This document shows positions 1 through 47,566 of a DNA stretch of 47,650 bases, one piece after another; the stretch's first letter is position 1, and each line of letters opens with the position of its first letter. The stretch is from Bigelowiella natans CCMP2755 (lineage: Eukaryota > Protista > Cercozoa), in NCBI GenBank assembly GCA_000320545.1, contig ADNK01002558.1, positions 1 to 47,650 on the forward strand, given 5' to 3'. The position numbers were made by a program, and so were the translations under genes. Below the pieces are notes generated by a model. The model made no database searches and was not told where the DNA came from. It saw only the letters and a program-made list of their open reading frames with translations.

Positions 1-2
1 AG

Positions 3-1499
3 TTCGAAAAGAAAGTCCCTACCCAGGTCACCCCTATGGTTAACGCGATTACCTTCGAGGACGGCGACTTCCTGCCTGAGCCAGAGGAGCTCCAGCACCT
101 TCAAGAACACCTGGATAAATACAAACACAAGCATGAGGTACTTAGTGATAGGATATATGTATACACTAATAATGTTAGGCGTACCTACGTGCCACGGCGG
201 ACCAGGGGAGCCCTTCTCTTTACCGCCCATGGACCTGCACACGTAGGAGAAAACCATATCACTGCTCTACTCTACCATTACTACTGGCCCTACAAGCTAA
301 AAGAGATAAGGACATACCTGCGTGGCTGCAGGTGCTCCAGCTTGAAGGCGGCAGGCGTCGCCACCAAGGAGTCCAGCAAGAGCCGTGCATCTAAGAAAAT
401 CAAAGCAAGGAACTTCTTAGATATCGTGCAAATTGATGTTTATAAGTACGATGGCTATCACTACCTTACCTTCGTTGATGTGGCCACTGGAAAGTGCTGG
501 GTTAAAAAGATTATCAAGGTCAACGTTGCTAAGAAGAACAAAGGCTTATATAAGCAGAGGCTTACTAACTGCTACCGTACCTGGGAGTCTGAGCTCCAGG
601 CTATCCCTGATGAAGTTAGCATAAACAAGATACCAAAGAAGTTACATGTGGATAATGAGACCTCTCTTCTACAGCTACCACACCCTAATATTGATGCCTC
701 ACCTGTATACTATGCCCAGTCCAACTCCAAGGTAGAGCGACTCCACCGCACCTTGGCCAACCTAAGCAGGATAAATAGCACCACACCAGACAAGATACAA
801 GGGTTAGTAAACGACACCTTCACGTCTGGGGGAGGTATCAAGGATAAGGAGAGGGAAGAAGGCGACGACAACGACGACGATACCGAGAGCGAAGACGAGA
901 AGGTCCCGTACGATGGCCGAGTTCTAAAGGAAGGACAGTATGTTAGGGCCAAGGTAAATCTGAGATCGAGAAATAAACAAGACCCCTTCTGGGGTGGCGT
1001 TGCAAAGGTTACCGAGAGGAAGGGGAGGAAGCAGTACTACATCTATGATGGGAACAGGGTCACCTTGCGCCACATCAGTCACCTAAAGAATTATGATATC
1101 GGTGAGAAGCTCCTAGAGGATGTTAAAGTAAACCCTACTGTGTGGGAGCGAGCAATGCCTTGTTTAGGACCCCGACCTAAGTTCGATGTGGAATATGGAA
1201 ACAATAAGGTCAGGGTGAACGACGATTGGCGCATGAAGATTGTCTATCTAGGCTACCCTGGATTACGAAATATGGAGAGGGTAGCTATGAAAATAAAGGA
1301 CGGAAAATATCAGCTACTCTACCTAGCTGTTCCCGACTTACCCTTTGAGCACTGGTATAAGGTCCTGGGGGACCTTGATGCAGAGGGCTGGTATGGACAC
1401 GAACCTAAGGACGAAGGTGAGTTCTGGGTAAGCGACAAAGGAGATAAGGTTAGAGAGGAATCTATTACCTGGTGGTTGGTGAAGTTCCGAAAGCGATGA
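3..1499 (+). CDS. Gypsy Pol C-terminal part (integrase HHCC + DDE core, SH3/GPY-like segment, Dam-like methyltransferase-fold domain); 5'-partial
   Basis: Frame is open from base 3. Motifs: AHGPAH...GCRC zinc finger, IVQIDVY, LHVDNE, NSKVERLHRTL. Confidence 0.9.
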   Translation, partial: FEKKVPTQVTPMVNAITFEDGDFLPEPEELQHLQEHLDKYKHKHEVLSDRIYVYTNNVRRTYVPRRTRGALLFTAHGPAHVGENHITALLYHYYWPYKLKEIRTYLRGCRCSSLKAAGVATKESSKSRASKKIKARNFLDIVQIDVYKYDGYHYLTFVDVATGKCWVKKIIKVNVAKKNKGLYKQRLTNCYRTWESELQAIPDEVSINKIPKKLHVDNETSLLQLPHPNIDASPVYYAQSNSKVERLHRTLANLSRINSTTPDKIQGLVNDTFTSGGGIKDKEREEGDDNDDDTESEDEKVPYDGRVLKEGQYVRAKVNLRSRNKQDPFWGGVAKVTERKGRKQYYIYDGNRVTLRHISHLKNYDIGEKLLEDVKVNPTVWERAMPCLGPRPKFDVEYGNNKVRVNDDWRMKIVYLGYPGLRNMERVAMKIKDGKYQLLYLAVPDLPFEHWYKVLGDLDAEGWYGHEPKDEGEFWVSDKGDKVREESITWWLVKFRKR

Positions 1500-1540
1500 A
1501 GGTCTAAGGGAATAAGGAAGGAAGGAAGGAGCAACGTGAC

Positions 1541-1550
1541 TTGGGGGAGG
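1541..1550 (+). promoter_or_regulatory. Polypurine tract of copy A
   Basis: TTGGGGGAGG directly abuts the TG start of the 3' LTR; a further purine run (AAGGAAGGAAGG) lies just upstream. Confidence 0.8.
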
Positions 1551-1877
1551 TGTAGCGCGTACCACTACGCGGGCACAAGTCACGTGCGACAACAAAGGGG
1601 TTGTCGCGGATATAGAATATAGATAACGTAGATATTAATACAGCATAGGCACGTGGGTTCCGGCGGGACTCATGGCAGCACACCGGAAGTGTGCTGCCCC
1701 ACGTGCGGCGGCATTCGCGAAAGCTTCGCGAATGATTACGCAGTGCACGATTTAATAAAAATATAATCTTTAATAAAAATAAACACAACTCTTCAAAAGG
1801 AAGCAAACGTGCCTTTCCCCCCCCCCTGCCTACTTGTGCACGTAGCGCCTCGGCCTGTGAACACCTTACGCGCAACA
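1551..1877 (+). repeat. 3' LTR of copy A (327 bp, TG...CA)
   Basis: Starts TGTAGCGCG, ends CGCAACA; matches 19831-20156 and 25221-25546 in reverse complement. Confidence 0.95.
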
Positions 1878-2059
1878 GCTCATGCACGTGCCACAACGAT
1901 GCAATGCAAACAGTGTCTGCTGCAGGTCACACCTCACGACTGTTCTTTGTGTGCTTGTCACGTGTGATGAACCAGTTTCACCGGCATCGCAAAGAGGGCA
2001 GATCGGGATGAGGGGGGCAAATTGTGGACTTCAGCCCGTGCGTTTCAATGACCGATTTT
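1878..2059. repeat. TpA-free decayed repeat forming the insertion flank of copy A
   Basis: No TA dinucleotide over about 180 bp; CA/TG-rich. Confidence 0.6.
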
Positions 2060-2099
2060 TAGAAACAGTTCGTTTCTGACAGTGGGTTTGCGATCCGCA

Positions 2100-2204
2100 G
2101 TTCGATGTCGCATGCGGTGAAAGAGAGGCCATTCAATGTCGCATGTGGTGAAAGAGACACAATTCAATGTCGCATGTGGTGAAAGAGACACAATTCAATG
2201 TCGC
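2100..2204. repeat. Minisatellite, ~31-bp unit x ~3.4
   Basis: ATTCAATGTCGCATGTGGTGAAAGAGACACA repeated in tandem; the first unit is diverged. Confidence 0.85.
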
Positions 2205-2255
2205 GACTAGACTAGCCGAAGAACCATCATCATATTACCCATCATTGATTTACAG

Positions 2256-3539: not shown

Positions 3540-4560
3540 GGTGCCCACGTTTAGACGTGCAAATCCGTTCCACGCTCGCCCAGCCATAGCATCGTCCTCG
3601 ATCGGTAGCTCGCACTTGCTGCGTGTCCATGATGAGTATCCGCTAATTCAACGGATGTTCTGCATTGTCTTAAGTTGTGTCTTTTTCAAAATCAACCCAT
3701 TCATCATCGTGCATCGGCTACACACATGCATGAACTCAAGTTCTCATTTGTGCGCATTCATTCAACAAGCTTTGCTATCTGTAGCTACGCGTCGCACAAT
3801 TTTAGCGTCCCATCAAGTTGTTGTGCCGCCCGCTGAACATGTGCACTTTGCAAGTGATGGGTCTTCGGCAACAAAATGAAAAGTTAGTTGCACATGTTGT
3901 CAACCTAGCAACGTCGCAGCATGCACACCAGCATGTGTCAGCCCATTGCACACGCTGGCACGTCGCTAATCGCAAATCTTTGCGTGTGATCGGTGCGCTT
4001 GCATGTTGTCGAATCAAAAACATGTGTTGCGGCCATGCACAACTGCAACCAGGTGCATGGCTAAATGAAAGGTGCTGGGACGTGAGCAAGCAACGTGCGC
4101 ACAACTAGCTAAATCGATGCGGACTCATGGACATTTAGCAGACATTGACAGAATTGTAGCTAAATCTAGAAATGACATGCATGCCTATGATAGACATGCA
4201 ATACACAATATATATAATATATATATAGTGTATTGCTGTGTCTATTATGCCTAGCTACTAGTCCATTTCTACGAGCCACGAGCAGCGACTGAAAATTTAT
4301 GGTCGCATCGTGCCTTCAGATGCTGTTCGCAAGAGAGATTCGGAATCAAGAATGAAAAAGCTTAGGTGGTGAAACACGTACTTTGCATGGCCCATGCATG
4401 GCAGTGCCACAGTCCACACCTTGCATGGTTGTCCTCCCATCATGCATCCACGTTGCAGGTGCGCAAATTCCGACTCGGATTCACATTCAGTTTTGCATGG
4501 ATGAGTGCATAATTTCATGACTGATTAGATGAGAGACAGAATCGTTGCAGTGTACAACGC
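3540..4560. repeat. Decayed repeat island, partly TpA-depleted, CA/TG-rich
   Basis: Abundant CATG/TGCA; Cys/His-rich spurious ORFs in several frames; a short TA-rich patch interrupts it at ~4200-4260. Confidence 0.55.
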
Positions 4561-4575
4561 ATTGGAACCAGCAAG

Positions 4576-5372
4576 TTACAGAGGTTTGGGGGAAGGAAGC
4601 AACCGAGACCCTTCCCACACTGCGCCCCGACAACGAACAGCAATGCCAGCGGCAAAATGGCCACTTTCAACAGCCTGGTTTGAGTCTAAAGAATGCCTGA
4701 TATGATGAGAAATTAACAACATCTGGTGAAAACAAATTGTTTCAATGGCAAGCATACTCAAAACCAAAAATCGACATTGTGAGGTATGTTAAGTGAAAAG
4801 AGTAAGCTACTTGTAGCTGCCATTGATTGCCACCACACAAATTCTGACTAGTGAAACTTGCTTACCCTGCTGCAATAGCTGCGAGATAGCCACCGACAAA
4901 GGCATCACCAGCGCCATTCGTGTCAACAACAGGTCCCAGTTTGTAGTCTAAATCATCATTATCGACTATGCAGCCATCATTGCCAGTCTTAATTGCAATC
5001 TTCTGTCCGTTATTACCCTGCTGCTCATGATCTCCAACATAAATTGGGTACTCTTTTATGGTGATAGCTGTTGCATCATTGCCTTCTTCTTCTTTTTCTT
5101 CTTCTTCTTCTTCTTCTAAGCAATCCCTAGAATTATTAAACCTTGTGAAATTTGCACACAAGCCTTGATAAATGAATAAATTGCAGTGACATACATAGCT
5201 ATCATTGTTGGCAGAAAGGAGAAAGTAGTGGCGTGTACAGCTGCCATGGACCTTCTTGTACTTATGGGAGATCTGGTCGCAATCAAGGTCGTATTAGCGC
5301 CACGAGTGACTGCCTGTTGTAATGTTTCAGTAAGATAGATTTATAATGCTGTTTCTCTTACTTCTCTCTCTT

Positions 5373-5424
<52 letters not shown>

Positions 5425-5433
5425 CCTCTCTCG

Positions 5434-5464
<31 letters not shown>

Positions 5465-9885: not shown

Positions 9886-9931
<46 letters not shown>

Positions 9932-9964
9932 ATGATAATAATAATAATAAAGCATGTTTTTAGC

Positions 9965-10009
<45 letters not shown>

Positions 10010-19339: not shown

Positions 19340-19716
19340 GTCATCGTAAGACAGCAAAAACCAACCTGCTCATCATCTCACATGACAAAATTGAACCAGG
19401 ATTCTCTGTCGCGGCAGCAAGATGGCATCGAATTGAAACAGACGCAAATTAGTGCCTCATTTTTTGTCAACTGCACCATTGCACTCGATTGTCACATCCA
19501 GCTTGTCAGCAGCGCTCATGCACGTCTTGTTTGAACATCGAAATGAATGTTGCATGAATCAATCAAGCAATCAACACGAATCATGGTGCTCCAGTTGATT
19601 GGAGAAGGCACGGATGAGTCAGCGTGTCCCGTCGTTTTTCCAACCACTCCACGCTGGCACGATTCACCAGTTCAGGCGTGCTGTTACGTGTGCTTGTGGC
19701 GCCGAGCTGGCGCTGC
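19340..19716. repeat. TpA-depleted decayed repeat flanking the LTR nest
   Basis: Very few TA over ~370 bp; CA/TG-rich. Confidence 0.55.
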
Positions 19717-19830
19717 TGTTGCGCGCAGGGTGCCGCTCGGTGCTCAAGTGCTCAAGGTGGGCGCTGAGTGCTCAAAGGGGAGGGGGACACGTTTGCTTCC
19801 TTTTGGATGGTCAATTTGTTTTCATCGATG
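19717..19830 (-). mobile_element. Left half of the interrupted 3' LTR of an old, hypermutated copy of the same gypsy family
   Basis: TGTTGCGCGCAGGGTG and CACGTTTGCTTCCTTTTG match the intact LTR (TGTTGCGCGTAAGGTG; CACGTTTGCTTCCTTTTG). It continues at 25551 after the GATG duplication. Confidence 0.85.
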
Positions 19831-20156
19831 TGTTGCGCGTAAGGTGTTCACAGGCCGAGGCGCTACGTGCACAAGTAGGCAGGGGGGGGGAAAGGCACGT
19901 TTGCTTCCTTTTGAAGAGTTGTGTTTATTTTTATTAAAGATTATATTTTTATTAAATCGTGCACTGCGTAATCATTCGCGAAGCTTTCGCGAATGCCGCC
20001 GCACGTGGGGCAGCACACTTCCGGTGTGCTGCCATGAGTCCCGCCGGAACCCACGTGCCTATGCTGTATTAATATCTACGTTATCTATATTCTATATCCG
20101 CGACAACCCCTTTGTTGTCGCACGTGACTTGTGCCCGCGTAGTGGTACGCGCTACA
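19831..20156 (-). repeat. 3' LTR of the intact element
   Basis: Direct repeat of 25221-25546; adjacent to the PPT. Confidence 0.95.
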
Positions 20157-20166
20157 CCTCCCCCAA
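20157..20166 (-). promoter_or_regulatory. Polypurine tract
   Basis: CCTCCCCCAA on + (TTGGGGGAGG on -) abuts the LTR. Confidence 0.8.
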
Positions 20167-20207
20167 GTCACGTTGCTCCTTCCTTCCTTCCTTATTCCCT
20201 TAGACCT

Positions 20208-23200
20208 TCATCGCTTTCGGAACTTCACCAACCACCAGGTAATAGATTCCTCTCTAACCTTATCTCCTTTGTCGCTTACCCAGAACTCACCTTCGTCCTT
20301 AGGTTCGTGTCCATACCAGCCCTCTGCATCAAGGTCCCCCAGGACCTTATACCAGTGCTCAAAGGGTAAGTCGGGAACAGCTAGGTAGAGTAGCTGATAT
20401 TTTCCGTCCTTTATTTTCATAGCTACCCTCTCCATATTTCGTAATCCAGGGTAGCCTAGATAGACAATCTTCATGCGCCAATCGTCGTTCACCCTGACCT
20501 TATTGTTTCCATATTCCACATCGAACTTAGGTCGGGGTCCTAAACAAGGCATTGCTCGCTCCCACACAGTAGGGTTTACTTTAACATCCTCTAGGAGCTT
20601 CTCACCGATATCATAATTCTTTAGGTGACTGATGTGGCGCAAGGTGACCCTGTTCCCATCATAGATGTAGTACTGCTTCCTCCCCTTCCTCTCGGTAACC
20701 TTTGCAACGCCACCCCAGAAGGGGTCTTGTTTATTTCTCGATCTCAGATTTACCTTGGCCCTAACATACTGTCCTTCCTTTAGAACTCGGCCATCGTACG
20801 GGACCTTCTCGTCTTCGCTCTCGGTATCGTCGTCGTTGTCGTCGCCTTCTTCCCTCTCCTTATCCTTGATACCTCCCCCAGACGTGAAGGTGTCGTTTAC
20901 TAACCCTTGTATCTTGTCTGGTGTGGTGCTATTTATCCTGCTTAGGTTGGCCAAGGTGCGGTGGAGTCGCTCTACCTTGGAGTTGGACTGGGCATAGTAT
21001 ACAGGTGAGGCATCAATATTAGGGTGTGGTAGCTGTAGAAGAGAGGTCTCATTATCCACATGTAACTTCTTTGGTATCTTGTTTATGCTAACTTCATCAG
21101 GGATAGCCTGGAGCTCAGACTCCCAGGTACGGTAGCAGTTAGTAAGCCTCTGCTTATATAAGCCTTTGTTCTTCTTAGCAACGTTGACCTTGATAATCTT
21201 TTTAACCCAGCACTTTCCAGTGGCCACATCAACGAAGGTAAGGTAGTGATAGCCATCGTACTTATAAACATCAATTTGCACGATATCTAAGAAGTTCCTT
21301 GCTTTGATTTTCTTAGATGCACGGCTCTTGCTGGACTCCTTGGTGGCGACGCCTGCCGCCTTCAAGCTGGAGCACCTGCAGCCACGCAGGTATGTCCTTA
21401 TCTCTTTTAGCTTGTAGGGCCAGTAGTAATGGTAGAGTAGAGCAGTGATATGGTTTTCTCCTACGTGTGCAGGTCCATGGGCGGTAAAGAGAAGGGCTCC
21501 CCTGGTCCGCCGTGGCACGTAGGTACGCCTAACATTATTAGTGTATACATATATCCTATCACTAAGTACCTCATGCTTGTGTTTGTATTTATCCAGGTGT
21601 TCTTGAAGGTGCTGGAGCTCCTCTGGCTCAGGCAGGAAGTCGCCGTCCTCGAAGGTAATCGCGTTAACCATAGGGGTGACCTGGGTAGGGACTTTCTTTT
21701 CGAACAGCCTGCTGAAATAGTCAGCAAGCTGCTTGTCTCCTGGTGCGTAGACCACTGTCCTCTTGTCCCTAAACTCTTCCGTGTCCGCCCTCATAGCTGC
21801 ATACTCATCGTTAGGCGCTTCGAGCTTGCGGTCGATGCCTAGGAGGGGCTTGTGGTCAGTCATTAAGGTGAAGCTGGGCACCGACAGCAGGTAGTATCTT
21901 AGTTTCCTCTGCGCCTCAGTCATGGCTTTATACTCTCCTTTTGTAGGGCTGTACTTGGCCTCAGCTGCTGTGCAGGCCCTGCCCCACACCCGTATGATCT
22001 GCTGGTCTTGGGTAAGTACAGCAGCCATACCTAGCTTAGACCAGTCTGTCCATAGGGTAGCTGGTCTAGTAGTGTCTAGCTTAGCATTCAATAGGGTGTT
22101 GCTGCATAACTTTATTAGGTTATCGAAGTGGGCATCAAGGCCAGCCTTGGCCCACACCTTAGCGAAGCTGAGGCCTACAGAGTTCTCCTTCCGGTAAGCA
22201 GTAGTAAAAGCAGCTGCAGTCCTAGCGTAGGTAGGGGAGAACCTACGTAGTATCCAAGCTGCAGTCTGCAAGAATGACTTTAACTCCTTTGCATTCTTAG
22301 GTTTAGGGGCTTGCTGTAGTGCTGCTACTTTCTCGGGGTTTGGGGTGATGCGGCCTTGCTCCAGGTAATATCCACACCACTTGATTCTTGTAGCTAGGAA
22401 TGTACACTTCTGCAGTCTAATAGTAAAACCGAAGTGTGCAAACCTAATAAATATATTTTCCAGGAGGAAGATCTGAGCGACGACTGTGTTGGTACATATT
22501 ATGTCATCATCCACATACACAAACACAAACACCCACAACACAGACGCCATCCCATCATGTGTGTATGCCCTGTAGTTCTGACTACTGAACGCATCCCCTG
22601 ATATGCTTAGGCCGTAAGGGAATACGACGAAGTGCCACTTCCTGTGCCTGCTGGAGAACGCGGTAATGGGGCGGGAGGTTTTGTGGATGGGTGTCTGCAT
22701 GTATGATTCATTTTTATCTAGGGAAGAGTAGTATTTGTATCCTATGACGTGTTCAATAACGTCATCTATCCTTGGTGTAGGTGTCTGGATCCTCTTTATT
22801 ACTCGGTTGTGGCGGATGAAGTTGTGCGCCAGGCGGAAGAAAGGGTAAGTAGGTATCTTAGCTAGCACATGTCTCACGTTCCATGGTGAGTTGCTTGGCT
22901 CTATCTTCCCTTCCTTTGCCCATTCATTGATCTGCCACTCTATCTTTTCCCAGTCCGCTTCCGGTCGCCTATGTTCTGGGTCATTGATGATGCACTCTTC
23001 GTATCCCTTCTTTAGCTCGATCTTTACTGGGGTAAGCTTGCTGGAGGGCTTCGTCGTCGGCTTGGTGATGTCAGAGTACTTCTCGTTTAATATTTTATTA
23101 ATGTACTTTTTGCCTTTGTCGATATCCCAATCATCAGCTGGGGGGGTCTTGTCCAGTAGCTCCGTTATCTGTCGGATGGTCTTGCCGGGGTTCTTCTTCC

Positions 23201-25181
23201 GTAGCTCGGTAGGTGTAGGTAGCTTGTTGTCCGCTAGGTCCATAAACTCTAACGCATTAACGCTTGACTCAGAGGTCCACTCGTCAAGCCGTATCATGTT
23301 CTGGCTGATGGTCCTGCCTGACTTCTTTGGCAACTTAGCAAAGTATATCTTGTGATTGTAGAATGATATGATCCCCCCTAATTTTTCTAGGGCATCCTGT
23401 CCGAGGAGTAGTTCCATGGATAAAGTCATGGCTACTCGGGTCTTGATTTGGGTCTCCGCGTCGCTGCCAGGTATCTGTAGCTTTAGCATTAGCTCACCGA
23501 CGGTCTTCATGGAAGAGCTTCCGTCTGCTTGAGCATATTTACGTTCTTTCTTAGTCACTTGATCCAATAGTCCTAACCTTCTTACTGTGCTTAGGCTTAT
23601 GAAGGACTTCGGCATGCTGCCACTATCCCAAAGGGCAGGTAGTTTCTTGTAGTCTCCGTAGCTGTCTTTAACTTTAACCTTGGTCATAGCAACTTTGATA
23701 GTCCTGTTAGCGTCTTCGTCATTAATGTTGCATACTCCTAAGTTCTTTATGTCGTCTAGGGTCATGGGCTTGTCTTGGTCCTGCGTTGCTGGTACTGCTG
23801 TCTTCGTCGGCGCCTGCTTAAGGTGATCTAATATTCCGTTTATCTGCTGCTGTATAGCATTGATACTGTTCTGCTTTTTGTTCTTATATTTATTGTTCTT
23901 CCCGTTGTTGCTGCCTTGCCATTTGCTGTTGTTATATCCTTGTCCTCTGCCTTTCTTTCTCTTTAACTTCTCGTAGTGTTCGTTGAGCTGCCTGATCGTC
24001 ATCCTGGGTCGTCCTTCTTTCCTGTCTCTGCAGTCTTTAGCGGTGTGTTTCCCTTTACGTGAGCAGTATCCGCAACGTCGGTTACCTTCCCTGTCCTTGT
24101 ACCAGTCTCGCTGCGGCTTAATAGCGTTAATGTTTCCTATGCCAGGTACCTTAGGGCTGGTAAACTTGCGGTCCTGCTCCTGCTCGCGTAGGGATATAGC
24201 CTGCACTGCTGCCTCCATCGTGGTGTAGCCTTTCTCCGTAACGTAAGTGGATTCCTTTATCTTTAACTTGAACTCTTCAAACCTTGCCTGATCATCACCT
24301 GTGTTGTAATTAAAATCATGTAGTTCGTCGATCATATCCTGGAAGCGCGTGGCAAAGTCTCTAACAGGTTCTCTCTCATGCTGCATCATTGCTCTGTATT
24401 TTCTAATAGCCTGGGGTAGGGAGTTAGCATCCTGTTCATTTACAAAAGCCTTCATTATCGCCTCAACGTCTCGTAGCCCACTAACTGTAGTGTGTATTTT
24501 CTCTAGCTGCCTGATCCGGGTCCTGCCTGTCTCGTAAAGGTCCATGGCTTGCTTTATTATAGCTAGCCATTTGAGCTTGTCGTTTTCGGTGGGGTTAGGG
24601 GTAAAGTCGCAGAGTATACTCCTAGCGTTCTTCCACCACCTCCTTGCCTCACCTCTTTTCCCGTTGTATTTCGTTATCATAACCGGTGCTGTTTTAACAG
24701 ACATGAACTGGGTGTTCCGCTGTACCGGCTGCTGCTGCTTGACGGTGCTCTGGGTCGTCCCCCGCGAGGCGCCCAGACCCCCGTCGTTCCTAAACAAAGC
24801 TGCCCACTCTGGAGGTAAGTCTGCTTCGTAATCCATGATGTCCTGCATGATAGCTGCCCAAACATCATGTGTCTGATACTTGTATTCTATCGATACTTTC
24901 AGTTTGGCGTAGTTGCTCGCCCTGGGTCGCAAGGCTCGTAATGCCATTACGACCTTCTTGCTTTCGGCGGCCACGTCCTCGTCGTCCGCCTCGTAGAAGT
25001 TCTCCAGTGCCTCTGCTGCTGCATCTGCTTTCTTAATCCCGGGTGCTGGTCCCGGCGGTGCCTGTGGAGGTGTTCCTCCTCCTTCCTTAGCGTCCGTATC
25101 GCCCTTCCTTTCCTGTTTCTGCTCGTGCCCTTGCACGGCCTGCGAGCCAAAGTCCTGCTGTTCTTCTAGCTGCTGTGACAT
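20208..25181 (-). CDS. Gag-Pol polyprotein, 1657 aa (Gag, zinc knuckle, protease, RT, RNase H, integrase, C-terminal Dam-like domain)
   Basis: CGYCSRKGKHTAKDC knuckle; LWDSGS protease; FVYVDDDII RT; LWTDWS...MTDHKPL RNase H; HHCC and D-D-E integrase after RT/RH gives gypsy order. Confidence 0.95.
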   Translation of the reverse strand: MSQQLEEQQDFGSQAVQGHEQKQERKGDTDAKEGGGTPPQAPPGPAPGIKKADAAAEALENFYEADDEDVAAESKKVVMALRALRPRASNYAKLKVSIEYKYQTHDVWAAIMQDIMDYEADLPPEWAALFRNDGGLGASRGTTQSTVKQQQPVQRNTQFMSVKTAPVMITKYNGKRGEARRWWKNARSILCDFTPNPTENDKLKWLAIIKQAMDLYETGRTRIRQLEKIHTTVSGLRDVEAIMKAFVNEQDANSLPQAIRKYRAMMQHEREPVRDFATRFQDMIDELHDFNYNTGDDQARFEEFKLKIKESTYVTEKGYTTMEAAVQAISLREQEQDRKFTSPKVPGIGNINAIKPQRDWYKDREGNRRCGYCSRKGKHTAKDCRDRKEGRPRMTIRQLNEHYEKLKRKKGRGQGYNNSKWQGSNNGKNNKYKNKKQNSINAIQQQINGILDHLKQAPTKTAVPATQDQDKPMTLDDIKNLGVCNINDEDANRTIKVAMTKVKVKDSYGDYKKLPALWDSGSMPKSFISLSTVRRLGLLDQVTKKERKYAQADGSSSMKTVGELMLKLQIPGSDAETQIKTRVAMTLSMELLLGQDALEKLGGIISFYNHKIYFAKLPKKSGRTISQNMIRLDEWTSESSVNALEFMDLADNKLPTPTELRKKNPGKTIRQITELLDKTPPADDWDIDKGKKYINKILNEKYSDITKPTTKPSSKLTPVKIELKKGYEECIINDPEHRRPEADWEKIEWQINEWAKEGKIEPSNSPWNVRHVLAKIPTYPFFRLAHNFIRHNRVIKRIQTPTPRIDDVIEHVIGYKYYSSLDKNESYMQTPIHKTSRPITAFSSRHRKWHFVVFPYGLSISGDAFSSQNYRAYTHDGMASVLWVFVFVYVDDDIICTNTVVAQIFLLENIFIRFAHFGFTIRLQKCTFLATRIKWCGYYLEQGRITPNPEKVAALQQAPKPKNAKELKSFLQTAAWILRRFSPTYARTAAAFTTAYRKENSVGLSFAKVWAKAGLDAHFDNLIKLCSNTLLNAKLDTTRPATLWTDWSKLGMAAVLTQDQQIIRVWGRACTAAEAKYSPTKGEYKAMTEAQRKLRYYLLSVPSFTLMTDHKPLLGIDRKLEAPNDEYAAMRADTEEFRDKRTVVYAPGDKQLADYFSRLFEKKVPTQVTPMVNAITFEDGDFLPEPEELQHLQEHLDKYKHKHEVLSDRIYVYTNNVRRTYVPRRTRGALLFTAHGPAHVGENHITALLYHYYWPYKLKEIRTYLRGCRCSSLKAAGVATKESSKSRASKKIKARNFLDIVQIDVYKYDGYHYLTFVDVATGKCWVKKIIKVNVAKKNKGLYKQRLTNCYRTWESELQAIPDEVSINKIPKKLHVDNETSLLQLPHPNIDASPVYYAQSNSKVERLHRTLANLSRINSTTPDKIQGLVNDTFTSGGGIKDKEREEGDDNDDDTESEDEKVPYDGRVLKEGQYVRAKVNLRSRNKQDPFWGGVAKVTERKGRKQYYIYDGNRVTLRHISHLKNYDIGEKLLEDVKVNPTVWERAMPCLGPRPKFDVEYGNNKVRVNDDWRMKIVYLGYPGLRNMERVAMKIKDGKYQLLYLAVPDLPFEHWYKVLGDLDAEGWYGHEPKDEGEFWVSDKGDKVREESITWWLVKFRKR

Positions 25182-25197
25182 TGTTAGTCAAATCGTT

Positions 25198-25215
25198 TCC
25201 CGTGTGTGGAAGCCA
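25198..25215 (-). promoter_or_regulatory. Putative tRNA primer-binding site
   Basis: TGGCTTCCACACACGGGA begins 5 nt inside the 5' LTR boundary. Its complement TCCCGTGTGTGGAAGCCA ends in CCA like a tRNA 3' end; the tRNA species is not identified. Confidence 0.6.
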
Positions 25216-25220
25216 AAGGT

Positions 25221-25546
25221 TGTTGCGCGTAAGGTGTTCACAGGCCGAGGCGCTACGTGCACAAGTAGGCAGGGGGGGGGAAAGGCACGTTTGCTTCCTT
25301 TTGAAGAGTTGTGTTTATTTTTATTAAAGATTATATTTTTATTAAATCGTGCACTGCGTAATCATTCGCGAAGCTTTCGCGAATGCCGCCGCACGTGGGG
25401 CAGCACACTTCCGGTGTGCTGCCATGAGTCCCGCCGGAACCCACGTGCCTATGCTGTATTAATATCTACGTTATCTATATTCTATATCCGCGACAACCCC
25501 TTTGTTGTCGCACGTGACTTGTGCCCGCGTAGTGGTACGCGCTACA
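25221..25546 (-). repeat. 5' LTR of the intact element
   Basis: Direct repeat of 19831-20156. Confidence 0.95.
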
Positions 25547-25550
25547 GATG

Positions 25551-26308
25551 AACGCGTTGTTGTCAAGTCGTGCACTGCGTGTTCACACGCGGCCTTTCGC
25601 GAAGCCGCCGCACGTGGGGCAGCACACTCCGGTTGTGCTGCCATGGGTCCCGCCGGAACCCACGTGCCCACACCATGTCAACATCCACGTCATCTGTGTT
25701 CCACATCCGCGACAACCCCTTTGTTGTCGCACGTGACTCGTGCCCGCGCAGCAGCACGCGCCACACCTCCCCCAAGTCACGTGGCTCCTTCCTTCCTTCC
25801 TTGTCCCCTTGGACCTTCATCGCTTTCGGAACTTCACCAACCACCAGGTGACAGATTCCTCTCCAACCTTGTCTCCTTTGTCGCTTGCCCAGAACTCACC
25901 TTCATCCTCAGGTTCACGCCCACACCAGCCCTCTGCATCAAGGTCCCCCAGGACCTCACACCAGTGCTCAAAAGGTGAGTCGGGAACAGCTGGGTGGAGT
26001 GGCTGACACTTTCCGTCCTTCACTTTCATGGCCACCCTCTCCACACTTCGCAATCCAGGGTGGCCTGGCCAGCTAGCTGGAGCTAGGTGCACAATTTTCA
26101 TGCGCCAATCATCACTTGCCCTGACCTTGTTGTCACCACACTCCACATCAAACTCAGGTCGAGGTCCCAAGCAAGGCATGGCTCGCTCCCACACGGTGGG
26201 GTCAATCTTGACGTCCTCTGGGAGCTTCTCACCGACATCACAATTCTTCAGGTGGCTGACGTGGCGCAAGGTGACCCTGCTCCCATCACAGACGTGGTGC
26301 TGCTTCCC
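25551..26308 (-). pseudogene. Old hypermutated copy of the same gypsy family: rest of 3' LTR (to 25765), PPT and Pol C-terminus
   Basis: The 150-aa ORF 25817-26269 aligns with the intact Pol C-terminus, with all Tyr replaced by Cys/His and one 18-nt in-frame insertion. Confidence 0.92.
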
Positions 26309-26748
26309 CCGCGAAGGTGTGCGCTGTGATCACAATGACTACGCACATGGTCAAAGCTGTCAAGTGGCCGATGACCATGTCAAGGGCATCAGTGGATGCA
26401 GCATGCTGAGTGCAAAGAGCGACCACCAGCAGAAGGGCCGTTCCAGCATGCGACGTGGCGGCACAGTTGGACATCAATCAAGTTTTTGGGCAGCAACCAG
26501 TGACACGCTTGTGCGCGTGTGCTTGGCACAAGCATGCGCACGTGCGCGGCAGCACAGCTTGCACATGCACCTGCAAGCTTCAAGGTGCCCGCCAGGCAGA
26601 GCGGTGAGAATGGTTTCTTGTGTGCAATTGTGTGCGTGTCGTGACAAGTGTTTTCAACTGAACAGGGTTTTCATTGAGTTTGCAACTGCTCTCGTTTTGT
26701 TTGGCTGCTGCGGTTGCGCCGGTCCAGCGCCCGCATCAATTTCGCTCG

Positions 26749-27790
26749 GGTCATGAGCCTCATGGCCTCCACGACTGCAAATGGCAAGAAGTTCAATGGG
26801 GACAAGGAAAAATTCAGTCAAGCCCACGAGAGGTTGGGATCGTCCATCAAGGCCATGGGGGTGCATTGCAACCTGCTAGCCTGGCTTTGATGAGACAAGC
26901 TGGCAAGGGGAATTCAAGAATCACACCTGTGAGCAGGATCGTGTTCTGAACAGCATCCCAAGGTTTGACTCTGCAGGATTGGTTCGTCTGACCACGGTGA
27001 CTGAGCACGCAAGGGAGTGCGAGCTGACACGACCAAGGCCGGACGAGAAAGAGAACAATGGGGAGTGGCACCTTGGCCGTCAGGCAGACCATGCGGTCAA
27101 GCATGCCGCGGAGTTGAAATCCCTCCACAACGGCATCTGCGAAAAAGTGCCCAAGATGATCGCGAATGCATGCACCGTCAAGCTGTGGTGGACACCATTG
27201 TTGGTCATGGTGTCCATCGCAATGATGGGATCAGCATGTTCCATCGGATGGGAGAGACATGCGCGGGTTCTGAATCCAAGAACACCTCTCTCTTGTCTCT
27301 GCACGGCAAATTTTTCCGCCTCGAGATGGTTCGCAATGGCAACGACTTGGAGAAGTGCACCACCAAGTTCAGGGAGCACAAGAGCACGTTGGAACTGATG
27401 GAGCAGAAGTCACCGAAGGAACTGATGGCCGCTGTTTGCTTGTCCGGTTTGTCTCAGAGATTTGCAAGAACTAGGGAAACCACATCGGATGAGGAAAATG
27501 GGTCAGACAGCGTGGACAAAGTTGTGCAACGAGTCAGAGCCCACAGCGAGTCATTGGATCACCAAAGAGAGAAGGAGAATGTTGTGCCAGACCCTCCGGA
27601 CGAACCCAAAAGAGGGTTGCAAGGGGAGTCCAAGAAGTTCATGGTCAAGTGTTTCAACTGCGGCATGGCACGTGTGAAGGGAAACCAGCAGGACTTGAAG
27701 AGTGGCAATCCGGCCATTGTGAAACAGACAATCGTGGAACAGTGTGACTGTCAGCAACGTGACGGCGACGCAATGCATCTGCTCTGACTG
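26749..27790 (+). pseudogene. Decayed Ty1/copia-like Gag remnant, TpA-depleted
   Basis: GGTCATGAGCC resembles a TA-to-CA converted copia PBS (GGTTATG[A/G]GCCC). It is followed by GKKFNGDKEKF, FFRLEM...LEKCTTKFREH...AVCLSGL (UBN2/gag-like) and a truncated knuckle KCFNCG. Confidence 0.6.
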
Positions 27791-27929
27791 TGACTAGGAA
27801 CCTCCTGAAGGCCATCTAGCCATGTCCACATTGTGGTGGTCCAGGGAGCACCCAGCAGCAACACTGCGAGGAGCGTTGCGTTTCCACAGCGCACGAGCGT
27901 CGTGCGACATTGAGAGAACAATGATCGAT

Positions 27930-29726
27930 GTCGCAGAATCAAAACTGGATCTACATCGTCTCCTTTGGTCGATATCATCAAAACGCATGTGGTTTTCTTC
28001 TTGCGACGAGAAGATTGTCGTTAGTTGCCTTTCCATAGACGAAAACACCCGCCCCCTTCCCTCCCCTGAGTGAAATGGAAACAGGGCTGGCTTGATACGT
28101 GATGGATACGCCGCTTCTCTCCCGCTGGAGGTAACGTACACTCTGAATTCATGTTGGGAAAGCTTTCGATCTGTGAAAGTCTTCAGATACGAGCCTCCAG
28201 GTAAAGGACAAGAGAAGCATTCTGTCCGTTTGCTCTCACGGTTGTTTTAATTTCGAATGGTCTCTGCAGGATTCTTTACAACAACCAGATATGTTGGCCC
28301 GTTCAAATCTGGATGTTCGCCTCGTGTCTGGTAGTTATTGTGCCGATGGTGTAAGATCCTTTGTTCTGAGTGTAAACGGGATCGATCAAATTGCAGGCGA
28401 TGCTGATATGGGACGTAGTCCGACATCATGGATTCGGTGACATGGTAAACATCAACCCCAACAATATGCAGATGCATCATCATTTTACAATCTCTTTGAA
28501 AAATGTGACAGATCCCAATATTTTGTCGCAGGTGAAACCCTTTGATGACTTATACGTGGTGAGCCGGCTCCTTGTTAACGCTTTCCACTCGACTCTCATT
28601 CAGCAACCCTGATAACAACACAGGTGTTGGATTACACGTTATGCGTTCTGTTGTTGATGGAGGTCCTTGTACGTGGAATCGCGGTGCAGGTCTGTAAATG
28701 AGCTGCTCATGTATAGAAAAGCTCCCATCGGTGAGGTGGGACACAATATGCGAGCTCATTCCTTTGCAACAAATTAATTATCTACAGGAAAGATTCTTCA
28801 GAGAGTGCGTCAATTACATCGATATGGTCTGTTATTTTCAAAAAATGATGCAAAGTTCCTCTCATATAATCGATGTTTCATTGTAGTTTGTGCTAGCTCT
28901 TCTGTTCGCAACGAATGTGGTAATGCACACGCGGCTGGATCGTTACCTCGGCCGGAATAAAGCGAGGTGATTTTCCCCCATGACATCTATTATTATTCAC
29001 TTCTGAAGACGTCGCTAAGCGGTATCATCAATGATTTTTTGAACATATGATCAGGAATATCTGGGTGCTAGGCATATACGCGGTGCGATATGTTGCCCAG
29101 ATCGTGCGCTTGTGCATGGTGTGGCACGAATCCAGAATCCAAGCTCGGTAATAGTTGTCTCTCTTAGATTTATGTTTTCTGCTCACAACTTGTCCGCTTC
29201 GCTTACTTGGAGCGGCGGTGAACTCACGTGGAGTATCGACGTAGGTTGCATCAAACTGCCAATGAATTGAAAGTAAGAATGCCTGGAATGGAGGAAGTCT
29301 CGGGTATTGAAAAGGAAAAACCTTTAAAAATCGCTTCGAAAGCAAAAATAACGTTTGTTCATATATCTATAATATATAGGTGAAATCACTGAAGGGGGCT
29401 CCCTTCTAGACACTCATGAGAGAAATCATCCAGGCTACCACTCATTCGGTGGCAATGGTGACGACCCCATTCTCCTTGAAAAATATGGAGCAACTTTCCA
29501 GAATCGGATTAGAAAAATACCAGAAGATACGCAGCCACAAAATGGATTATCTGAATCCTCATACGATAGAAGAAAATCAGCCGCGGTAAGTCTCTACTCA
29601 AACAATGATTCTGTTCTCAATTTATGACTGATATTGTCGTATCAGGATGCAATGGCGGTTGCATTTGATATAACGCCTCTGGACTCTCCATCGGGTAGAA
29701 GCTGGGGAGATACTCTTAGCTCATAG
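27930..29726 (+). CDS. Unknown multi-exon membrane protein; 5' exons uncertain
   Basis: GT-AG-bounded exons give ERFFRECVNYIDM|FVLALLFATNVVMHTRLDRYLGRNKAR|NIWVLGIYAVRYVAQIVRLCMVWHESRIQAR and a hydrophilic tail ending ...GRSWGDTLSS*. Confidence 0.45.
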
Positions 29727-32936: not shown

Positions 32937-32978
<42 letters not shown>

Positions 32979-36949: not shown

Positions 36950-38236
<1,287 letters not shown>

Positions 38237-38289
38237 GTGCCGCACTTAAAACTGAAAGATGGAACGTGAACTTTCTTGTTGTGAGTTCA

Positions 38290-39180
38290 TGAAGCCATCT
38301 TCAGTGCCTGGATGACAATGGCTAGATGGGTTAGATTGGGTCGCTGGCAAGGGAAGAGTGTACAGAAGAAAACGCATGGTGGAATTTTTGCAATGTTGAA
38401 ATCTGATCAAAGCTCAGTGATGCATTCTCCAGTCCATAGCAAGTGCTGACCCTGCTGCTTTGGTCGACCAACGTGCGCAGCGCGTGCACTCTGCATGACG
38501 AGTGCCAGAGTGTTGTGCACTGGTGTGCCTGTTGTCATCATGATTCTGCTGGTCATTGATGATGACTGGACGCTGCCGGATCGCATCAGATCCCTCATGC
38601 TAGGCCAGCTAGCTAGCTGGCCTGTCTGCCAGCAGTCCACTAGCTAGCTAGCGCTGAGCTTGCTCTTGACTTGCTAGCTTGACGACGCACATGCTGGCAT
38701 GCTAGCGCTAGCATGGCTACGTGGCAGTCTAGCAGTGCCATCGCCAAGACTAGCTAGCTTGATGATCCTCCAGAATGCTAGCATGCACTGGAGCAGTCTG
38801 CCGCCACACCTGCATGGCTAGACACAGCTAGACAGCGCAGCTGGTAGCTAGCCCTCCTCTCACACACTCTAGCACTGTGAGCAATGATTTCAGAAACGAT
38901 CGATTGTCAAGCTAGCTAGCTAGCTAGCCATTGCGAGATTAGCTCTGTCTAGCTGTGGAGCTGTCTAGCTAGCTAGCTGTTCACATGCACCTCTAGACCT
39001 GCTGCTGTGACACGCTGGCGCGTGCTAGCTGCATGGTTCAACGTGACGCTGCTGCGCTGCAGCGCGCTACTAGCATTAGCGCGCAAGCCACCTCTAGACC
39101 TGCCTAATTTCAGATCTTGATGACAACGAGCACATTGACATGCATCGAGGGAGGAGGGCTAGCTAGCTAGAGGGTACGTG
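38290..39180. repeat. Decayed repeat island, extremely CTAG/GCTAGC-rich; other TpA contexts scarce
   Basis: Dozens of CTAG including (GCTA)4 at ~38911; lies between convergent H3 and AP5Z1. Confidence 0.7.
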
Positions 39181-41889: not shown

Positions 41890-41929
<40 letters not shown>

Positions 41930-45149: not shown

Positions 45150-46210
45150 TTCTGCTCTTTGTCATCGACCTTTTTGGTTCGCCATCTCTCCAATGACCCT
45201 CCAGTTAAGTTAGTTCGAGGCACTGCGTTTCGCACACTGCAAATGTCTTGTTACATTTTGGAAATGTAGTTCTTCATCATTGTTCATTGTTCATTGTTCA
45301 TTGTTAATTCGAAGGATCTTTGATCTTTGACAGCAACAAGCGCGAAGGGGCATCATCTAGTCATGGCGCTTGTTTCTTGCAACTTTGATGATCATGGCAC
45401 ATTGGAAATCATCTCTAGAGGGCACAAGAAAAGCGTCATGCAAACTTTGGCGTGATGATCGGAAGTGAACAGCGCTTGGCACAGCAAAGCGTTCAGTGAG
45501 AACCACTCGCACGCAAACACTCACGTGCAGTTCTGGCAGAGTGAGACAATTTTGGACAGGACAACGACATCAATGACGAAGCCAAAGTGCGTTCGTGCTC
45601 ACACACGATGACCACGCTAGCACGTTTCGACTGTGCTGCTGCATGAACAGTCACTTTGCCTGTCAGCCAGCTAGCCAGAGAACTTGAGTGAACAAATTGA
45701 AACCACCGTTCAATTTTGCGCCCTGTGGCTGGCAGCACTTTTGATTTGGGATTTCGTTCCACGTCCAACTAGACGTTGTCGTCATCATTGGCGCGGTCGA
45801 TCCCGACGACGAGCACGTCTCTGGACGTGCTAGCGTTCCGCGACGATGCGAGTGAGCGAGTGCTGTGTGGTGCGTGCACACACACGTGCCGCTAAGACCG
45901 CGCCTAGACACACATGGAAGCAAAAATGTAGGCTTCGGGCACGTTGCATCATTGCATGGTTGCTTGCACGACACACACGTTTGCACTTGCAAAATCAATG
46001 TTGTCTGCAAACTTTCCAGGCGCTGTCAACTGCACATGCAATGCAACACATGCAAGTTGCTGGCCATTGCTAGATTGCATTGTGCCTTGACCGCATTGCA
46101 TGCATGCAGGGCTGCAGTGTCATAATAGACATCATTCGTCGCGATGCAACCTTGCCAATCGACGTGCACACTTTCATGCTCGGGAACACATGAACCGTGC
46201 TAGCATGGCG
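45150..46210. repeat. TpA-depleted decayed repeat island
   Basis: In 45260-46120 nearly all surviving TA lie in CTAG; Cys/His-rich spurious ORFs. Confidence 0.7.
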
Positions 46211-46211
46211 T

Positions 46212-46445
46212 CTACAGCTTGAAGTAATCTTCGTTGTCGGGCTTTTCTTCGATTTTAAGAGCTCTCCGCTCCTTCTTGCTCATTCTCGCAATCTTTGCCT
46301 TAATCTTAGAGCCCCCTAATCTCTCCTTAATGGCAGCTCTGTCCGCAGCCTCTGCTCGCTGCCTGCGCCTGGCCAGTCTAAGATGATTCAAATAGAAAAG
46401 AATCCGAATATTAACATGTAACACCGCACCCACCCACGCACACGC

Positions 46446-47236: not shown

Positions 47237-47284
<48 letters not shown>

Positions 47285-47423
47285 TCTCCCTATCTCTTAT
47301 CTCCTCCTCCCCCAGCAGCATCGTTATAGCAACCTTGGTGTTAGGGTTTAAGGCGAGCTTTTTGTCCTTGCGCCTCGACTCTTTCAGAACGCGAATACTC
47401 CTCAAAAAATCTACGTTTTCCAT
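46212..47423 (-). CDS. Unknown basic, helical multi-exon protein; exon structure partly unresolved
   Basis: Coding-like segments MENVDFLRSIRVLKESRRKDKKLALNPNTK, AIHVKKKHKARYPRPWREPG, RLLSSQGRIEKPYLPKISWEHRK, LTGMAMKRMRKEHQMQRQNERQRRKE, RLARRRQR...EEKPDNEDYFKL*, separated by microsatellite-bearing introns. Confidence 0.5.

Positions 47424-47492: not shown

Positions 47493-47566
<74 letters not shown>

What the first reader, a model, noticed from the sequence alone, without database searches (positions are those of the whole stretch)
25551..26308. Repeat-targeted TpA-to-TpG/CpA hypermutation: a candidate 'reverse-RIP' genome-defence system
Manual alignment: the intact element has 38 TA dinucleotides in 20161-20680 and none is retained in the homologous old copy (25770-26308). 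Nearly all became TG or CA, i.e. A-to-G at TpA on either strand. Polarity is shown by the protein: all 8 Tyr in the aligned C-terminus became Cys (5) or His (3), with Leu-to-Pro/Ser and Ile-to-Val changes, while most non-TA positions are identical. Fungal RIP (established) goes the opposite way, CpA to TpA. Genes, promoters (36950-37490) and young copies keep their TA. Near-saturation, dinucleotide specificity, both-strand action and restriction to repeats point to an enzymatic process such as adenine deamination or mutagenic adenine/thymine modification. I know of no characterised pathway for this; novelty needs a literature check. An alternative is that a modified base at TpA is being misread by the sequencing chemistry.
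Basis: partly seen in the sequence, partly recalled or inferred. Interest (0 to 1): 0.93.

Follow-up and report, generated by a model that had tools for sequence, protein, structure and literature searches.

The report
TpA-erasing hypermutation of old retrotransposon relics
An old retrotransposon fragment in the alga Bigelowiella natans has had almost every TA converted to TG or CA, which is real and striking, but it is one more example of a TpA-specific hypermutation of foreign DNA that a 2026 preprint has already shown experimentally in this species.

Summary
The window is Bigelowiella natans nuclear DNA. A young Ty3/gypsy element (19831-25546, identical LTRs, 4-bp target duplication) sits inside the LTR of an old copy. 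Of 54 TpA in the young sequence that align to the old copy, 29 are CA, 22 TG, 1 AA, 2 kept and none CG. Outside TpA the two are 91.6% identical.

The direction is TA to TG/CA. A second, independently mutated relic (Bigna1 137107) has His where this relic has Cys at 3 Tyr codons of the active element. In the adjacent copia-like gag relic, 4 Tyr conserved in outgroups are Cys or His.

The TA-free patch is about 2.9 kb, with 9 TpA where about 115 are expected. It covers two unrelated TE relics and has sharp edges.

The process is already described. Mettrop et al. (bioRxiv 10.64898/2026.01.13.699255) saw de novo TpA-only A:T>G:C mutation in integrated viruses and TpA-depleted clusters genome-wide. 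The enzyme is unknown.

"Repeat-targeted" is not supported. The active multicopy family is untouched, and the published main target is single-copy.

Small additions from this window: surviving TpA are mostly CTAG, there is same-strand TAT>CAC coupling, and both young insertions lie in TA-free patches. First readers of this scan noted the same signature many times elsewhere in this genome.

The parts
25551..25765 (-). Old gypsy relic: distal part of its 3' LTR, TpA-erased
   Evidence: Aligns to the young LTR 19946-20156. In this stretch the young TpA are CA or TG in the old copy.
25766..26312 (-). Old gypsy relic: PPT region and the last ~164 codons of Pol, TpA-erased and truncated at 26312
   Evidence: It translates without a stop (25820-26311). 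All 11 Tyr of the active element are replaced, 6 by Cys and 5 by His. There is an 18-bp in-frame insertion at about 26069-26092.
19716..19826 (-). Old gypsy relic: proximal part of the same LTR, split off by the young insertion
   Evidence: With the young element removed, 19716 onward aligns to the start of the young LTR.
19831..25546 (-). Young, intact Ty3/gypsy LTR retrotransposon (copy B) nested in the old LTR, with TpA intact
   Evidence: The LTRs 19831-20156 and 25221-25546 are 100% identical. The ORF 20208-25181 encodes 1657 aa with RVT_1 and RT_RNaseH domains. It has 398 TpA and Rho_TpA 1.07. It matches Bigna1 gene models at 100%.
19827..19830 (.). Target-site duplication GATG, left copy (right copy at 25547-25550)
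   Evidence: Read directly from the sequence.
26313..27950 (+). Second TpA-erased relic: copia-type element 5' part with a gag ORF at 27017-27787
   Evidence: Weak Pfam hit to Retrotran_gag_2 (E 0.003). Homologues at 59%, 49% and 34% identity, one a 1438-aa polyprotein. The ORF has 0 Tyr in 256 aa, and 4 Tyr conserved in the outgroups are Cys (3) or His (1) here. Only 5 TpA occur in 26313-27950, 4 of them in CTAG and 1 in CTAC.
19350..19715 (.). TpA-poor DNA of unknown origin outside the old LTR; left end of the patch
   Evidence: It holds 2 TpA in 365 bp and has no homology within the window.
2..1877 (+). Copy A of the young gypsy element (3' part, running off the window)
   Evidence: It matches copy B over 1876 bp with 0 substitutions and one 1-nt indel in a C run.
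1878..2208 (.). TA-free patch directly flanking copy A
   Evidence: It holds 1 TpA in 330 bp and is closed by two CTAG. Rho_TpA is 0.17 and Rho_CpA+TpG is 1.61.
45201..46300 (.). Third, less complete TpA-depleted patch
   Evidence: Rho_TpA is 0.30 and Rho_CpA+TpG is 1.59. Of its 21 remaining TpA, 9 are in CTAG.

Best explanation
The locus is a patch of dead transposon DNA in the Bigelowiella natans nuclear genome: a gypsy relic, a copia-like relic and short flanks. It was hit in place, at the DNA level, by the TpA-specific A:T>G:C hypermutation already reported for this species.

In each event one base pair of a 5'-TA-3' site changes, on either strand. This gives TG or CA and destroys the palindromic target, so CG never arises. 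Over time nearly every TpA is erased.

The most likely chemistry is enzymatic deamination of adenine to inosine in a 5'-T context, read as G at the next replication. That step is inferred, not shown; taken alone I give it about 0.5.

Targeting is regional and sharply bounded, to within about 100 bp. It falls on silent foreign DNA rather than on repeats as such. A later, still active gypsy copy that landed inside the patch is untouched.
For: Organism and elements.

Spectrum: 51 of 54 TpA became CA (29) or TG (22) and none became CG. The transition rate at TpA is far above other A/T (P 1e-13).

Both strands are hit about equally and are interleaved: 21 runs observed against 26 expected, z -1.45.

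Polarity:
- Two independent relics have Cys against His at 3 Tyr codons of the active element. Only TAY is one step from both.
- There are three TG/CA double differences in the LTR.
- In the copia-like gag, 4 of 4 outgroup-conserved Tyr are Cys or His. 15 of 38 derived changes fit A>G/T>C only, against 4 for the reverse direction.

Regional action: one contiguous 2.9-kb patch spans two unrelated relics plus flanks, with 9 TpA against about 115 expected.

Direct demonstration in this species comes from the preprint. It reports 231 de novo mutations in two integrated viral regions, almost all at TpA, together with genome-wide TpA-depleted/CpA+TpG-enriched clusters and an enrichment of RT and DDE domains. 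The sister relic is in its Table S8.

At the published rate (about 1.1e-5 per TpA per generation, my calculation), 94% conversion needs only about 2.6e5 generations.
Against: - No enzyme or base intermediate is known, and sequence alone cannot tell adenine-directed from thymine-directed chemistry.
- I could not obtain reads or other B. natans DNA, so activity at this locus is not shown directly.
- About 11% of non-TpA A/T bases also differ by A:T>G:C. Part of this may be ordinary G:C>A:T change in the young lineage.
- What marks the patch for targeting is unknown.
- The origin of 19350-19715 and 26313-26750 is not established, so some spill-over into non-TE DNA cannot be excluded.
Confidence: 0.85

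Rival explanations
1. The chemistry is thymine-directed rather than adenine-directed. An enzyme such as a TET/JBP-type dioxygenase oxidises T in 5'-TpA-3' to 5-hydroxymethyl- or 5-formyluracil. This mispairs with G and gives T>C. By strand symmetry the result cannot be told apart from A>G at TpA.
For: T>C at T*pA on one strand is the same event as A>G at TpA* on the other. 5-formyluracil in DNA gives mainly A:T>G:C transitions by mispairing with guanine (PMC7051996). From my own knowledge, not checked here: thymine hydroxylation at specific sites is known in kinetoplastids and dinoflagellates.
Against: No such enzyme or base is known in B. natans. The preprint found an ADAT2-like deaminase candidate, although it is untested. 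Oxidised thymine usually also yields other substitutions, but only 12 transversions occur in 738 aligned bases.
Confidence: 0.15
2. The trigger is homology or repetition, as in fungal RIP. Any duplicated sequence is mutated, and the young copies are simply too recent to show it.
For: The mutated DNA here is TE-derived. The young copies differ by 0 substitutions, so they could be very recent.
Against: The family has many near-identical copies on many scaffolds. At the published rate, 280 TpA shared by copies A and B would show a hit within about 950 generations. The main published target is single-copy. The patch includes about 800 bp without any repeat in the window.
Confidence: 0.1
3. The polarity is reversed. 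A RIP-like C>T process at CpA/TpG enriched TA in the active lineage, and the TA-free copy is ancestral.
For: Read old-to-young, all 80 transitions are C>T or G>A, the commonest mutation class. The young element has an unusually high Rho_TpA of 1.07.
Against: An ancestor with no Tyr, no TAA and no TAG is implausible for a 1657-aa Pol. Two relics differ Cys against His at 3 sites. Outgroups keep Tyr where the copia-like relic has Cys or His. The young ORF is intact with identical LTRs. De novo mutations go TA>TG/CA.
Confidence: 0.02
4. ADAR-like A-to-I hyperediting of retrotransposon RNA was fixed by reverse transcription, so the copy was already mutated when it inserted.
For: The 5'-U/T neighbour preference resembles that of ADARs (discussed in the preprint).
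Against: Changes fall on both strands almost equally, 29 against 22, and are interleaved. The patch runs across two unrelated elements and flanking DNA with common edges. The same spectrum arises de novo in integrated DNA viruses.
Confidence: 0.02
5. It is a sequencing or assembly artefact: a modified base at TpA in this region is misread as G.
For: A doubly modified TpA would read TG from one strand and CA from the other and never CG, as observed (inference).
Against: In the mutation-accumulation study, TpA in targeted regions read as TA in the ancestor and converted heritably in only some lines. The relics also carry ordinary indels, transversions and CpG decay, as expected of old DNA.
Confidence: 0.02

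Closest known systems
TpA-specific hypermutation of integrated viral DNA in Bigelowiella natans (Mettrop et al., bioRxiv 10.64898/2026.01.13.699255, 2026)
   Same: Same species. Same dinucleotide target and outcome (TpA>TpG/CpA on either strand). Same regional clustering with low Rho_TpA and high Rho_CpA+TpG. Foreign or TE origin of the targets. A sister relic of this gypsy family is in their Table S8.
   Different: Their direct evidence is for giant-virus and virophage insertions that are still TpA-rich and currently mutating. This locus is an end state: 94% of TpA are gone, in LTR-retrotransposon relics, with a direct active-copy against relic comparison. Their main text has no occurrence of 'retrotransposon', 'LTR' or 'CTAG' and describes no same-strand TAT>CAC coupling (word search).
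Repeat-induced point mutation (RIP) of fungi
   Same: Dinucleotide-specific, near-saturating transition hypermutation of mobile DNA on both strands, leaving sharply bounded compositional islands.
   Different: The direction is opposite (RIP makes TpA from CpA; here TpA is destroyed). No dependence on duplication is seen. The organism is a rhizarian alga. No link to a sexual cycle is known.
ADAR A-to-I hyperediting and APOBEC3 editing of viruses and retroelements in animals
   Same: Deaminase-type clustered transitions aimed at foreign nucleic acid. ADARs also favour a 5' U.
   Different: Those act on RNA or on single-stranded cDNA and mark one strand. Here resident double-stranded chromosomal DNA is hit on both strands, across element borders.
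ADAT2/ADAT3 (TadA-like) deaminases with reported DNA activity (amphioxus, Trypanosoma), as cited in the preprint
   Same: They could supply adenine deamination on DNA. B. natans has an ADAT2-like protein (Bn78255 in the preprint).
   Different: No evidence links it to this process. It is not encoded in this window. TpA specificity and regional targeting are unexplained.

Membership tests
B. natans TpA hypermutation islands (Mettrop et al. 2026) | Located in the B. natans nuclear genome | tested here: met
   The young Pol matches jgi Bigna1 gene models at 100%.
B. natans TpA hypermutation islands (Mettrop et al. 2026) | Substitutions are A>G/T>C at TpA, giving TpG or CpA | tested here: met
   51 of 54 TpA became CA/TG and none became CG. 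80 of 105 mismatches are of this type. P is 1e-13 against other A/T.
B. natans TpA hypermutation islands (Mettrop et al. 2026) | The direction is loss of TpA, not gain | tested here: met
   Cys against His in two relics at 3 Tyr codons. Outgroup Tyr are Cys or His in the gag relic.
B. natans TpA hypermutation islands (Mettrop et al. 2026) | [quoted passage not shown] | tested here: inconclusive
   The thresholds are met strongly (0.06 and 1.59 over 2.7 kb). In the assembly the patch is split by the 5.7-kb young element, and only about 2.4 kb is contiguous. Whether it passes the 3-window rule therefore depends on window phase.
B. natans TpA hypermutation islands (Mettrop et al. 2026) | Target is of foreign (viral or transposon) origin | tested here: met
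   Gypsy Pol/LTR relic and copia-type gag relic. About 800 bp of the patch is unidentified.
B. natans TpA hypermutation islands (Mettrop et al. 2026) | De novo TpA mutations accumulate at the locus in culture | not testable with these tools
   This needs the mutation-accumulation reads.
Fungal RIP | C>T at CpA (or another CpN), creating TpA | tested here: not met
   The polarity is the opposite.
Fungal RIP | Triggered by sequence duplication | tested here: not met
   Copies A and B differ by no substitution, and many further copies are near-identical at the protein level, yet the family keeps all its TpA. The published target is single-copy.
ADAR-type RNA hyperediting fixed by retrotransposition | A>G confined to the sense strand of one retroelement copy | tested here: not met
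   29 changes fall on one strand and 22 on the other, interleaved. The patch spans two elements and flanks.
TadA/ADAT-like DNA adenine deaminase system | A deaminase acting on A in TpA DNA | not testable with these tools
   No deaminase gene was looked for or seen in the window. The preprint only names a candidate.

The most novel reading that the evidence does not exclude
The relics record properties of the mutator that the preprint does not describe, and these constrain its mechanism and targeting:

1. CTAG, the one context where both strands have a 3' G, is strongly refractory. It accounts for 17 of 33 surviving TpA in three patches, against 7% in the background.
2. Neighbouring adenines on one strand are edited together (TAT>CAC). 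This suggests the enzyme works along a single strand.
3. Edges are sharp to about 100 bp, even 50 bp from a gene start.
4. An expressed, multicopy, actively transposing gypsy family is exempt, and both of its copies in this window inserted into TA-free patches.

Together these would point to a guided DNA base-modifying defence (by small RNA or a chromatin mark) that acts on silenced foreign DNA, and to a retrotransposon that homes to such silenced patches.
Probability: 0.3. Interest if true: 0.65.

Novelty: already known. Interest (0 to 1): 0.35.

Why it matters
A eukaryotic process that rewrites TpA in foreign DNA at about 1000 times the background rate is a remarkable genome defence, and its enzyme is still unknown. 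It was, however, reported in 2026 for this same species and assembly.

This locus adds a clean end-state example with a built-in control. An active copy is nested in a saturated relic, which fixes the polarity without experiments. It shows that retrotransposons are targets, and it argues that repetition alone is not the trigger.

The CTAG survivors and the same-strand coupling are cheap, testable clues for whoever characterises the enzyme.

Tried and rejected
- **Pol C-terminus, outgroup test.** Distant gypsy Pol homologues align only to about residue 1415, so they give no outgroup for the C-terminal 157 aa. I used a second relic instead.
- **Pol C-terminus, domain and fold.** Pfam finds no domain there. 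PDB sequence search finds nothing. The single-sequence AlphaFold model is unusable (mean pLDDT 36). I therefore could not test a chromodomain or the methyltransferase-like fold suggested in another note.
- **DNA for the second relic.** It is not on record, so the three-way comparison is at the protein level only.
- **Strand processivity.** A runs test for CA and TG outcomes is not significant (z -1.45).
- **Extended sequence context.**
  - Within-site competition hints that a 3' C is disfavoured (LRT P about 0.03).
  - My hand tally of the preprint's Table S2 gives the 3' neighbour of the edited A as T 67, A 67, C 52, G 20, not normalised for site availability.
  - That tally does not confirm the hint, so I make no claim beyond CTAG.
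- **Bacterial promoter/terminator scan** of the patch edge: irrelevant for a eukaryote.
- **Reverse polarity, RNA editing, sequencing artefact:** considered and rejected; see the rival explanations.

Full report
**What is there.** The window is nuclear DNA of the chlorarachniophyte alga Bigelowiella natans. The 1657-aa ORF at 20208-25181 (minus strand) matches several jgi Bigna1 gene models at 100%. It carries reverse-transcriptase and RNase H domains.

A self-comparison and direct reading give the anatomy:
- A young Ty3/gypsy LTR retrotransposon, copy B, lies at 19831-25546. Its 326-bp LTRs are 100% identical (TG...CA ends), and it is flanked by a 4-bp target duplication GATG (19827-19830 and 25547-25550).
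- A second copy, A (2-1877, opposite orientation), differs from B by one 1-nt indel and no substitution over 1876 bp.
- Copy B is inserted into the LTR of an older copy of the same family. With B removed, 19716-19826 joins 25551-26312 into an old 3' LTR plus the last ~164 codons of Pol, truncated at 26312.

**The observation.** Young 19946-20685 aligns to old 25557-26312 with 105 mismatches in 738 aligned bases. Of these, 80 are T>C or A>G in the young-to-old direction.
- Of 54 TpA in the young sequence, 29 are CA, 22 TG and 1 AA in the old copy. Two are kept beside an 18-bp insertion, and none is CG.
- Per base, transitions affect 51/108 bases in TpA, 29/267 other A/T, 5/78 CpG bases and 8/285 other G/C. 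TpA against other A/T gives P = 1e-13.
- Outside TpA the copies are 91.6% identical, with 12 transversions.
By my alignment 35 went to CA/TG, one to AA and two persist next to the indel.
- In the protein, 11 Tyr (not 8) are replaced by Cys (6) or His (5). The other changes are those expected from TpA within or across codons: I>V, L>P/S, N>S/D, K>E, R>G, V>A.

**Extent.**
- The five longest TpA-free intervals of the window all lie in 25543-27795.
- The pre-insertion patch, 19350-19830 plus 25551-27950 (2881 bp), has 9 TpA where about 115 are expected at the window's background (P 1e-37).
- Its Rho_TpA is 0.06 and Rho_CpA+TpG is 1.59. The rest of the window has 0.78 and 1.18, and the young element 1.07 and 1.01.
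- To the right of the gypsy relic the patch holds a second, unrelated relic, a copia-type gag. The ORF 27017-27787 gives a weak Pfam Retrotran_gag_2 hit and has clear homologues, one a 1438-aa polyprotein.
- About 365 bp on the left (19350-19715) and about 440 bp between the relics are unidentified.
- The edges are sharp: normal TpA density resumes within about 100 bp on both sides.

**Polarity.** This was the key open point, because the same differences read backwards are C>T at CpA, the RIP signature. Four lines of evidence agree that TA is ancestral.
1. A second relic of the same family, gene model Bigna1 137107 (P0050, from the aug1.37 gene-model series), also lacks every Tyr of the active element in the 7 codons it covers. 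At 3 of them it has His where this window's relic has Cys. It also differs in outcome at about 7 other TpA-containing codons. TGY and CAY are each one step from TAY and two steps from each other, so TAY is the ancestor and the two relics were hit independently.
2. The LTR alignment has three adjacent TG-against-CA double differences. These are best explained by a TA ancestor.
3. In the copia-like gag relic there is no Tyr in 256 residues. All 4 Tyr shared by two outgroup homologues from other sources are Cys (3) or His (1). Of the derived changes, 15 of 38 fit A>G/T>C alone, against 4 for the reverse direction.
4. The TA-rich version is the functional one. It has an intact ORF, identical LTRs and many near-identical copies. 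A matching MMETSP transcript also exists.

- In a mutation-accumulation experiment with B. natans, 231 of 302 nuclear single-nucleotide mutations fell in an integrated giant-virus region and a virophage region.
- Almost all were A>G or T>C at TpA, at about 1000 times the background rate, and only in some lines.
- The authors then searched the reference genome for the long-term signature. They found 124 clusters with low Rho_TpA and high Rho_CpA+TpG, and TpA-depleted gene models enriched in reverse-transcriptase and DDE domains.
- The sister relic 137107 is in their Table S8.
- They propose a defence against foreign DNA by adenine deamination and name an ADAT2-like candidate. No enzyme is shown.

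The phenomenon, its direction and its link to foreign DNA are therefore known. This locus is another instance, in the same assembly. First readers of this scan have also flagged the same signature many times in other windows of this genome. Those notes are unchecked.

**What this locus adds.**
1. It shows the end state. 94% of TpA are converted in LTR-retrotransposon relics, measured against a living copy of the same family. From the preprint's numbers I estimate about 1.1e-5 events per TpA per generation, so 94% conversion needs only about 2.6e5 generations.
2. It argues against a repeat-induced trigger.
   - The active family is multicopy and expressed yet keeps 398 TpA.
   - At the published rate, the 280 TpA shared by copies A and B would show a difference within about 950 generations.
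   - The main published target is single-copy.
3. Surviving TpA are mostly CTAG.
   - Counts are 6 of 9 in the main patch (P about 1e-6), 2 of 3 beside copy A and 9 of 21 in a third patch at 45201-46300. Background TpA are CTAG in 7% of cases.
   - Sparing is relative: of three CTAG in the aligned young sequence, two were converted.
   - The preprint's main text does not mention CTAG.
4. There is same-strand coupling.
   - TATT became CACT in 4 of 4 cases when the TpA went to CA, and in 0 of 5 when it went to TG.
   - The preprint's own Table S2 has the same event (scaffold 10 positions 450383 and 450385, same line). It lists 4 T>C at ATG/ATT, although the text says all mutations fall on TpA.
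5. Non-TpA A/T bases show an A:T>G:C excess (10.9% against 3.6% for G:C>A:T). Part of this may be ordinary change in the young lineage, since polarity is not resolved for these sites.
6. Both young copies in the window sit in TA-free patches: B inside the old relic, and A next to 1878-2208. This hints at an insertion preference, but n = 2.

**Mechanism.**
- Shown: a DNA-level, strand-symmetric, TpA-specific A:T>G:C process acts regionally on resident foreign DNA. One hit removes the target for the other strand, hence no CG.
- Inferred: adenine deamination to inosine in a 5'-T context.
- A thymine-directed route cannot be excluded from sequence, because T>C at T*pA equals A>G at TpA* on the other strand. 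Oxidation of thymine to 5-formyluracil mispairs with G and gives mainly A:T>G:C (PMC7051996).
- RNA editing followed by reverse transcription is excluded by the equal, interleaved use of both strands and by the patch crossing element borders.
- A sequencing artefact is unlikely, given the heritable, line-specific conversions in the preprint.

**Verdict.** The 'repeat-targeted' reading is not supported. The process is already in the literature, with its enzyme still unknown.

Noticed in passing
window 1878-2208: A TA-free patch directly flanks young copy A: 1 TpA in 330 bp, Rho_TpA 0.17. It contains roughly 31-45-bp tandem repeats at 2098-2204 and ends with two CTAG about 50 bp before an apparent gene start. 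Both young gypsy copies in the window therefore lie in TA-erased DNA.
   Followed up: partly
window 45201-46300: A third TpA-depleted, CpA+TpG-enriched patch (Rho 0.30 and 1.59). Of its 21 remaining TpA, 9 are in CTAG. Its ORFs are Cys/His-rich and look non-coding. Its origin was not identified.
   Followed up: partly
window 3701-4100, 4301-4800, 38101-38600: Shorter segments pass the preprint's Rho thresholds (Rho_TpA 0.24-0.36) but show no CTAG enrichment. They may be partly mutated DNA or ordinary exons.
   Followed up: no
window 20211-20702 (minus); same region in copy A at about 1005-1496: The last ~160 residues of the gypsy Pol have no Pfam or PDB sequence match, and the single-sequence AlphaFold model fails (pLDDT 36). 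An MMETSP transcript (P0048) encodes just this C-terminal part as a 'complete' 165-aa ORF. The fold and function of this domain are open.
   Followed up: partly
preprint Table S2, not the window: Four of the 211 scaffold-10 de novo mutations are T>C at ATG (3) or ATT (1), not at TpA. One pair (450383 and 450385, same line) is a TAT>CAC double hit, like the coupling seen in the relic here.
   Followed up: partly
window 26069-26092: The old relic carries an 18-bp in-frame insertion holding two of the surviving CTAG. It looks like a small local duplication. This matches the separate first-reader note on this spot.
   Followed up: no
window 5360-5460, 9888-10006, 32940-32975, 41890-41927, 47239-47297, 47498-47533: Short simple-sequence tracts (about 35-100 bp) recur and cross-match each other in the self-BLAST. 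They are ordinary microsatellites and unrelated to the finding.
   Followed up: no
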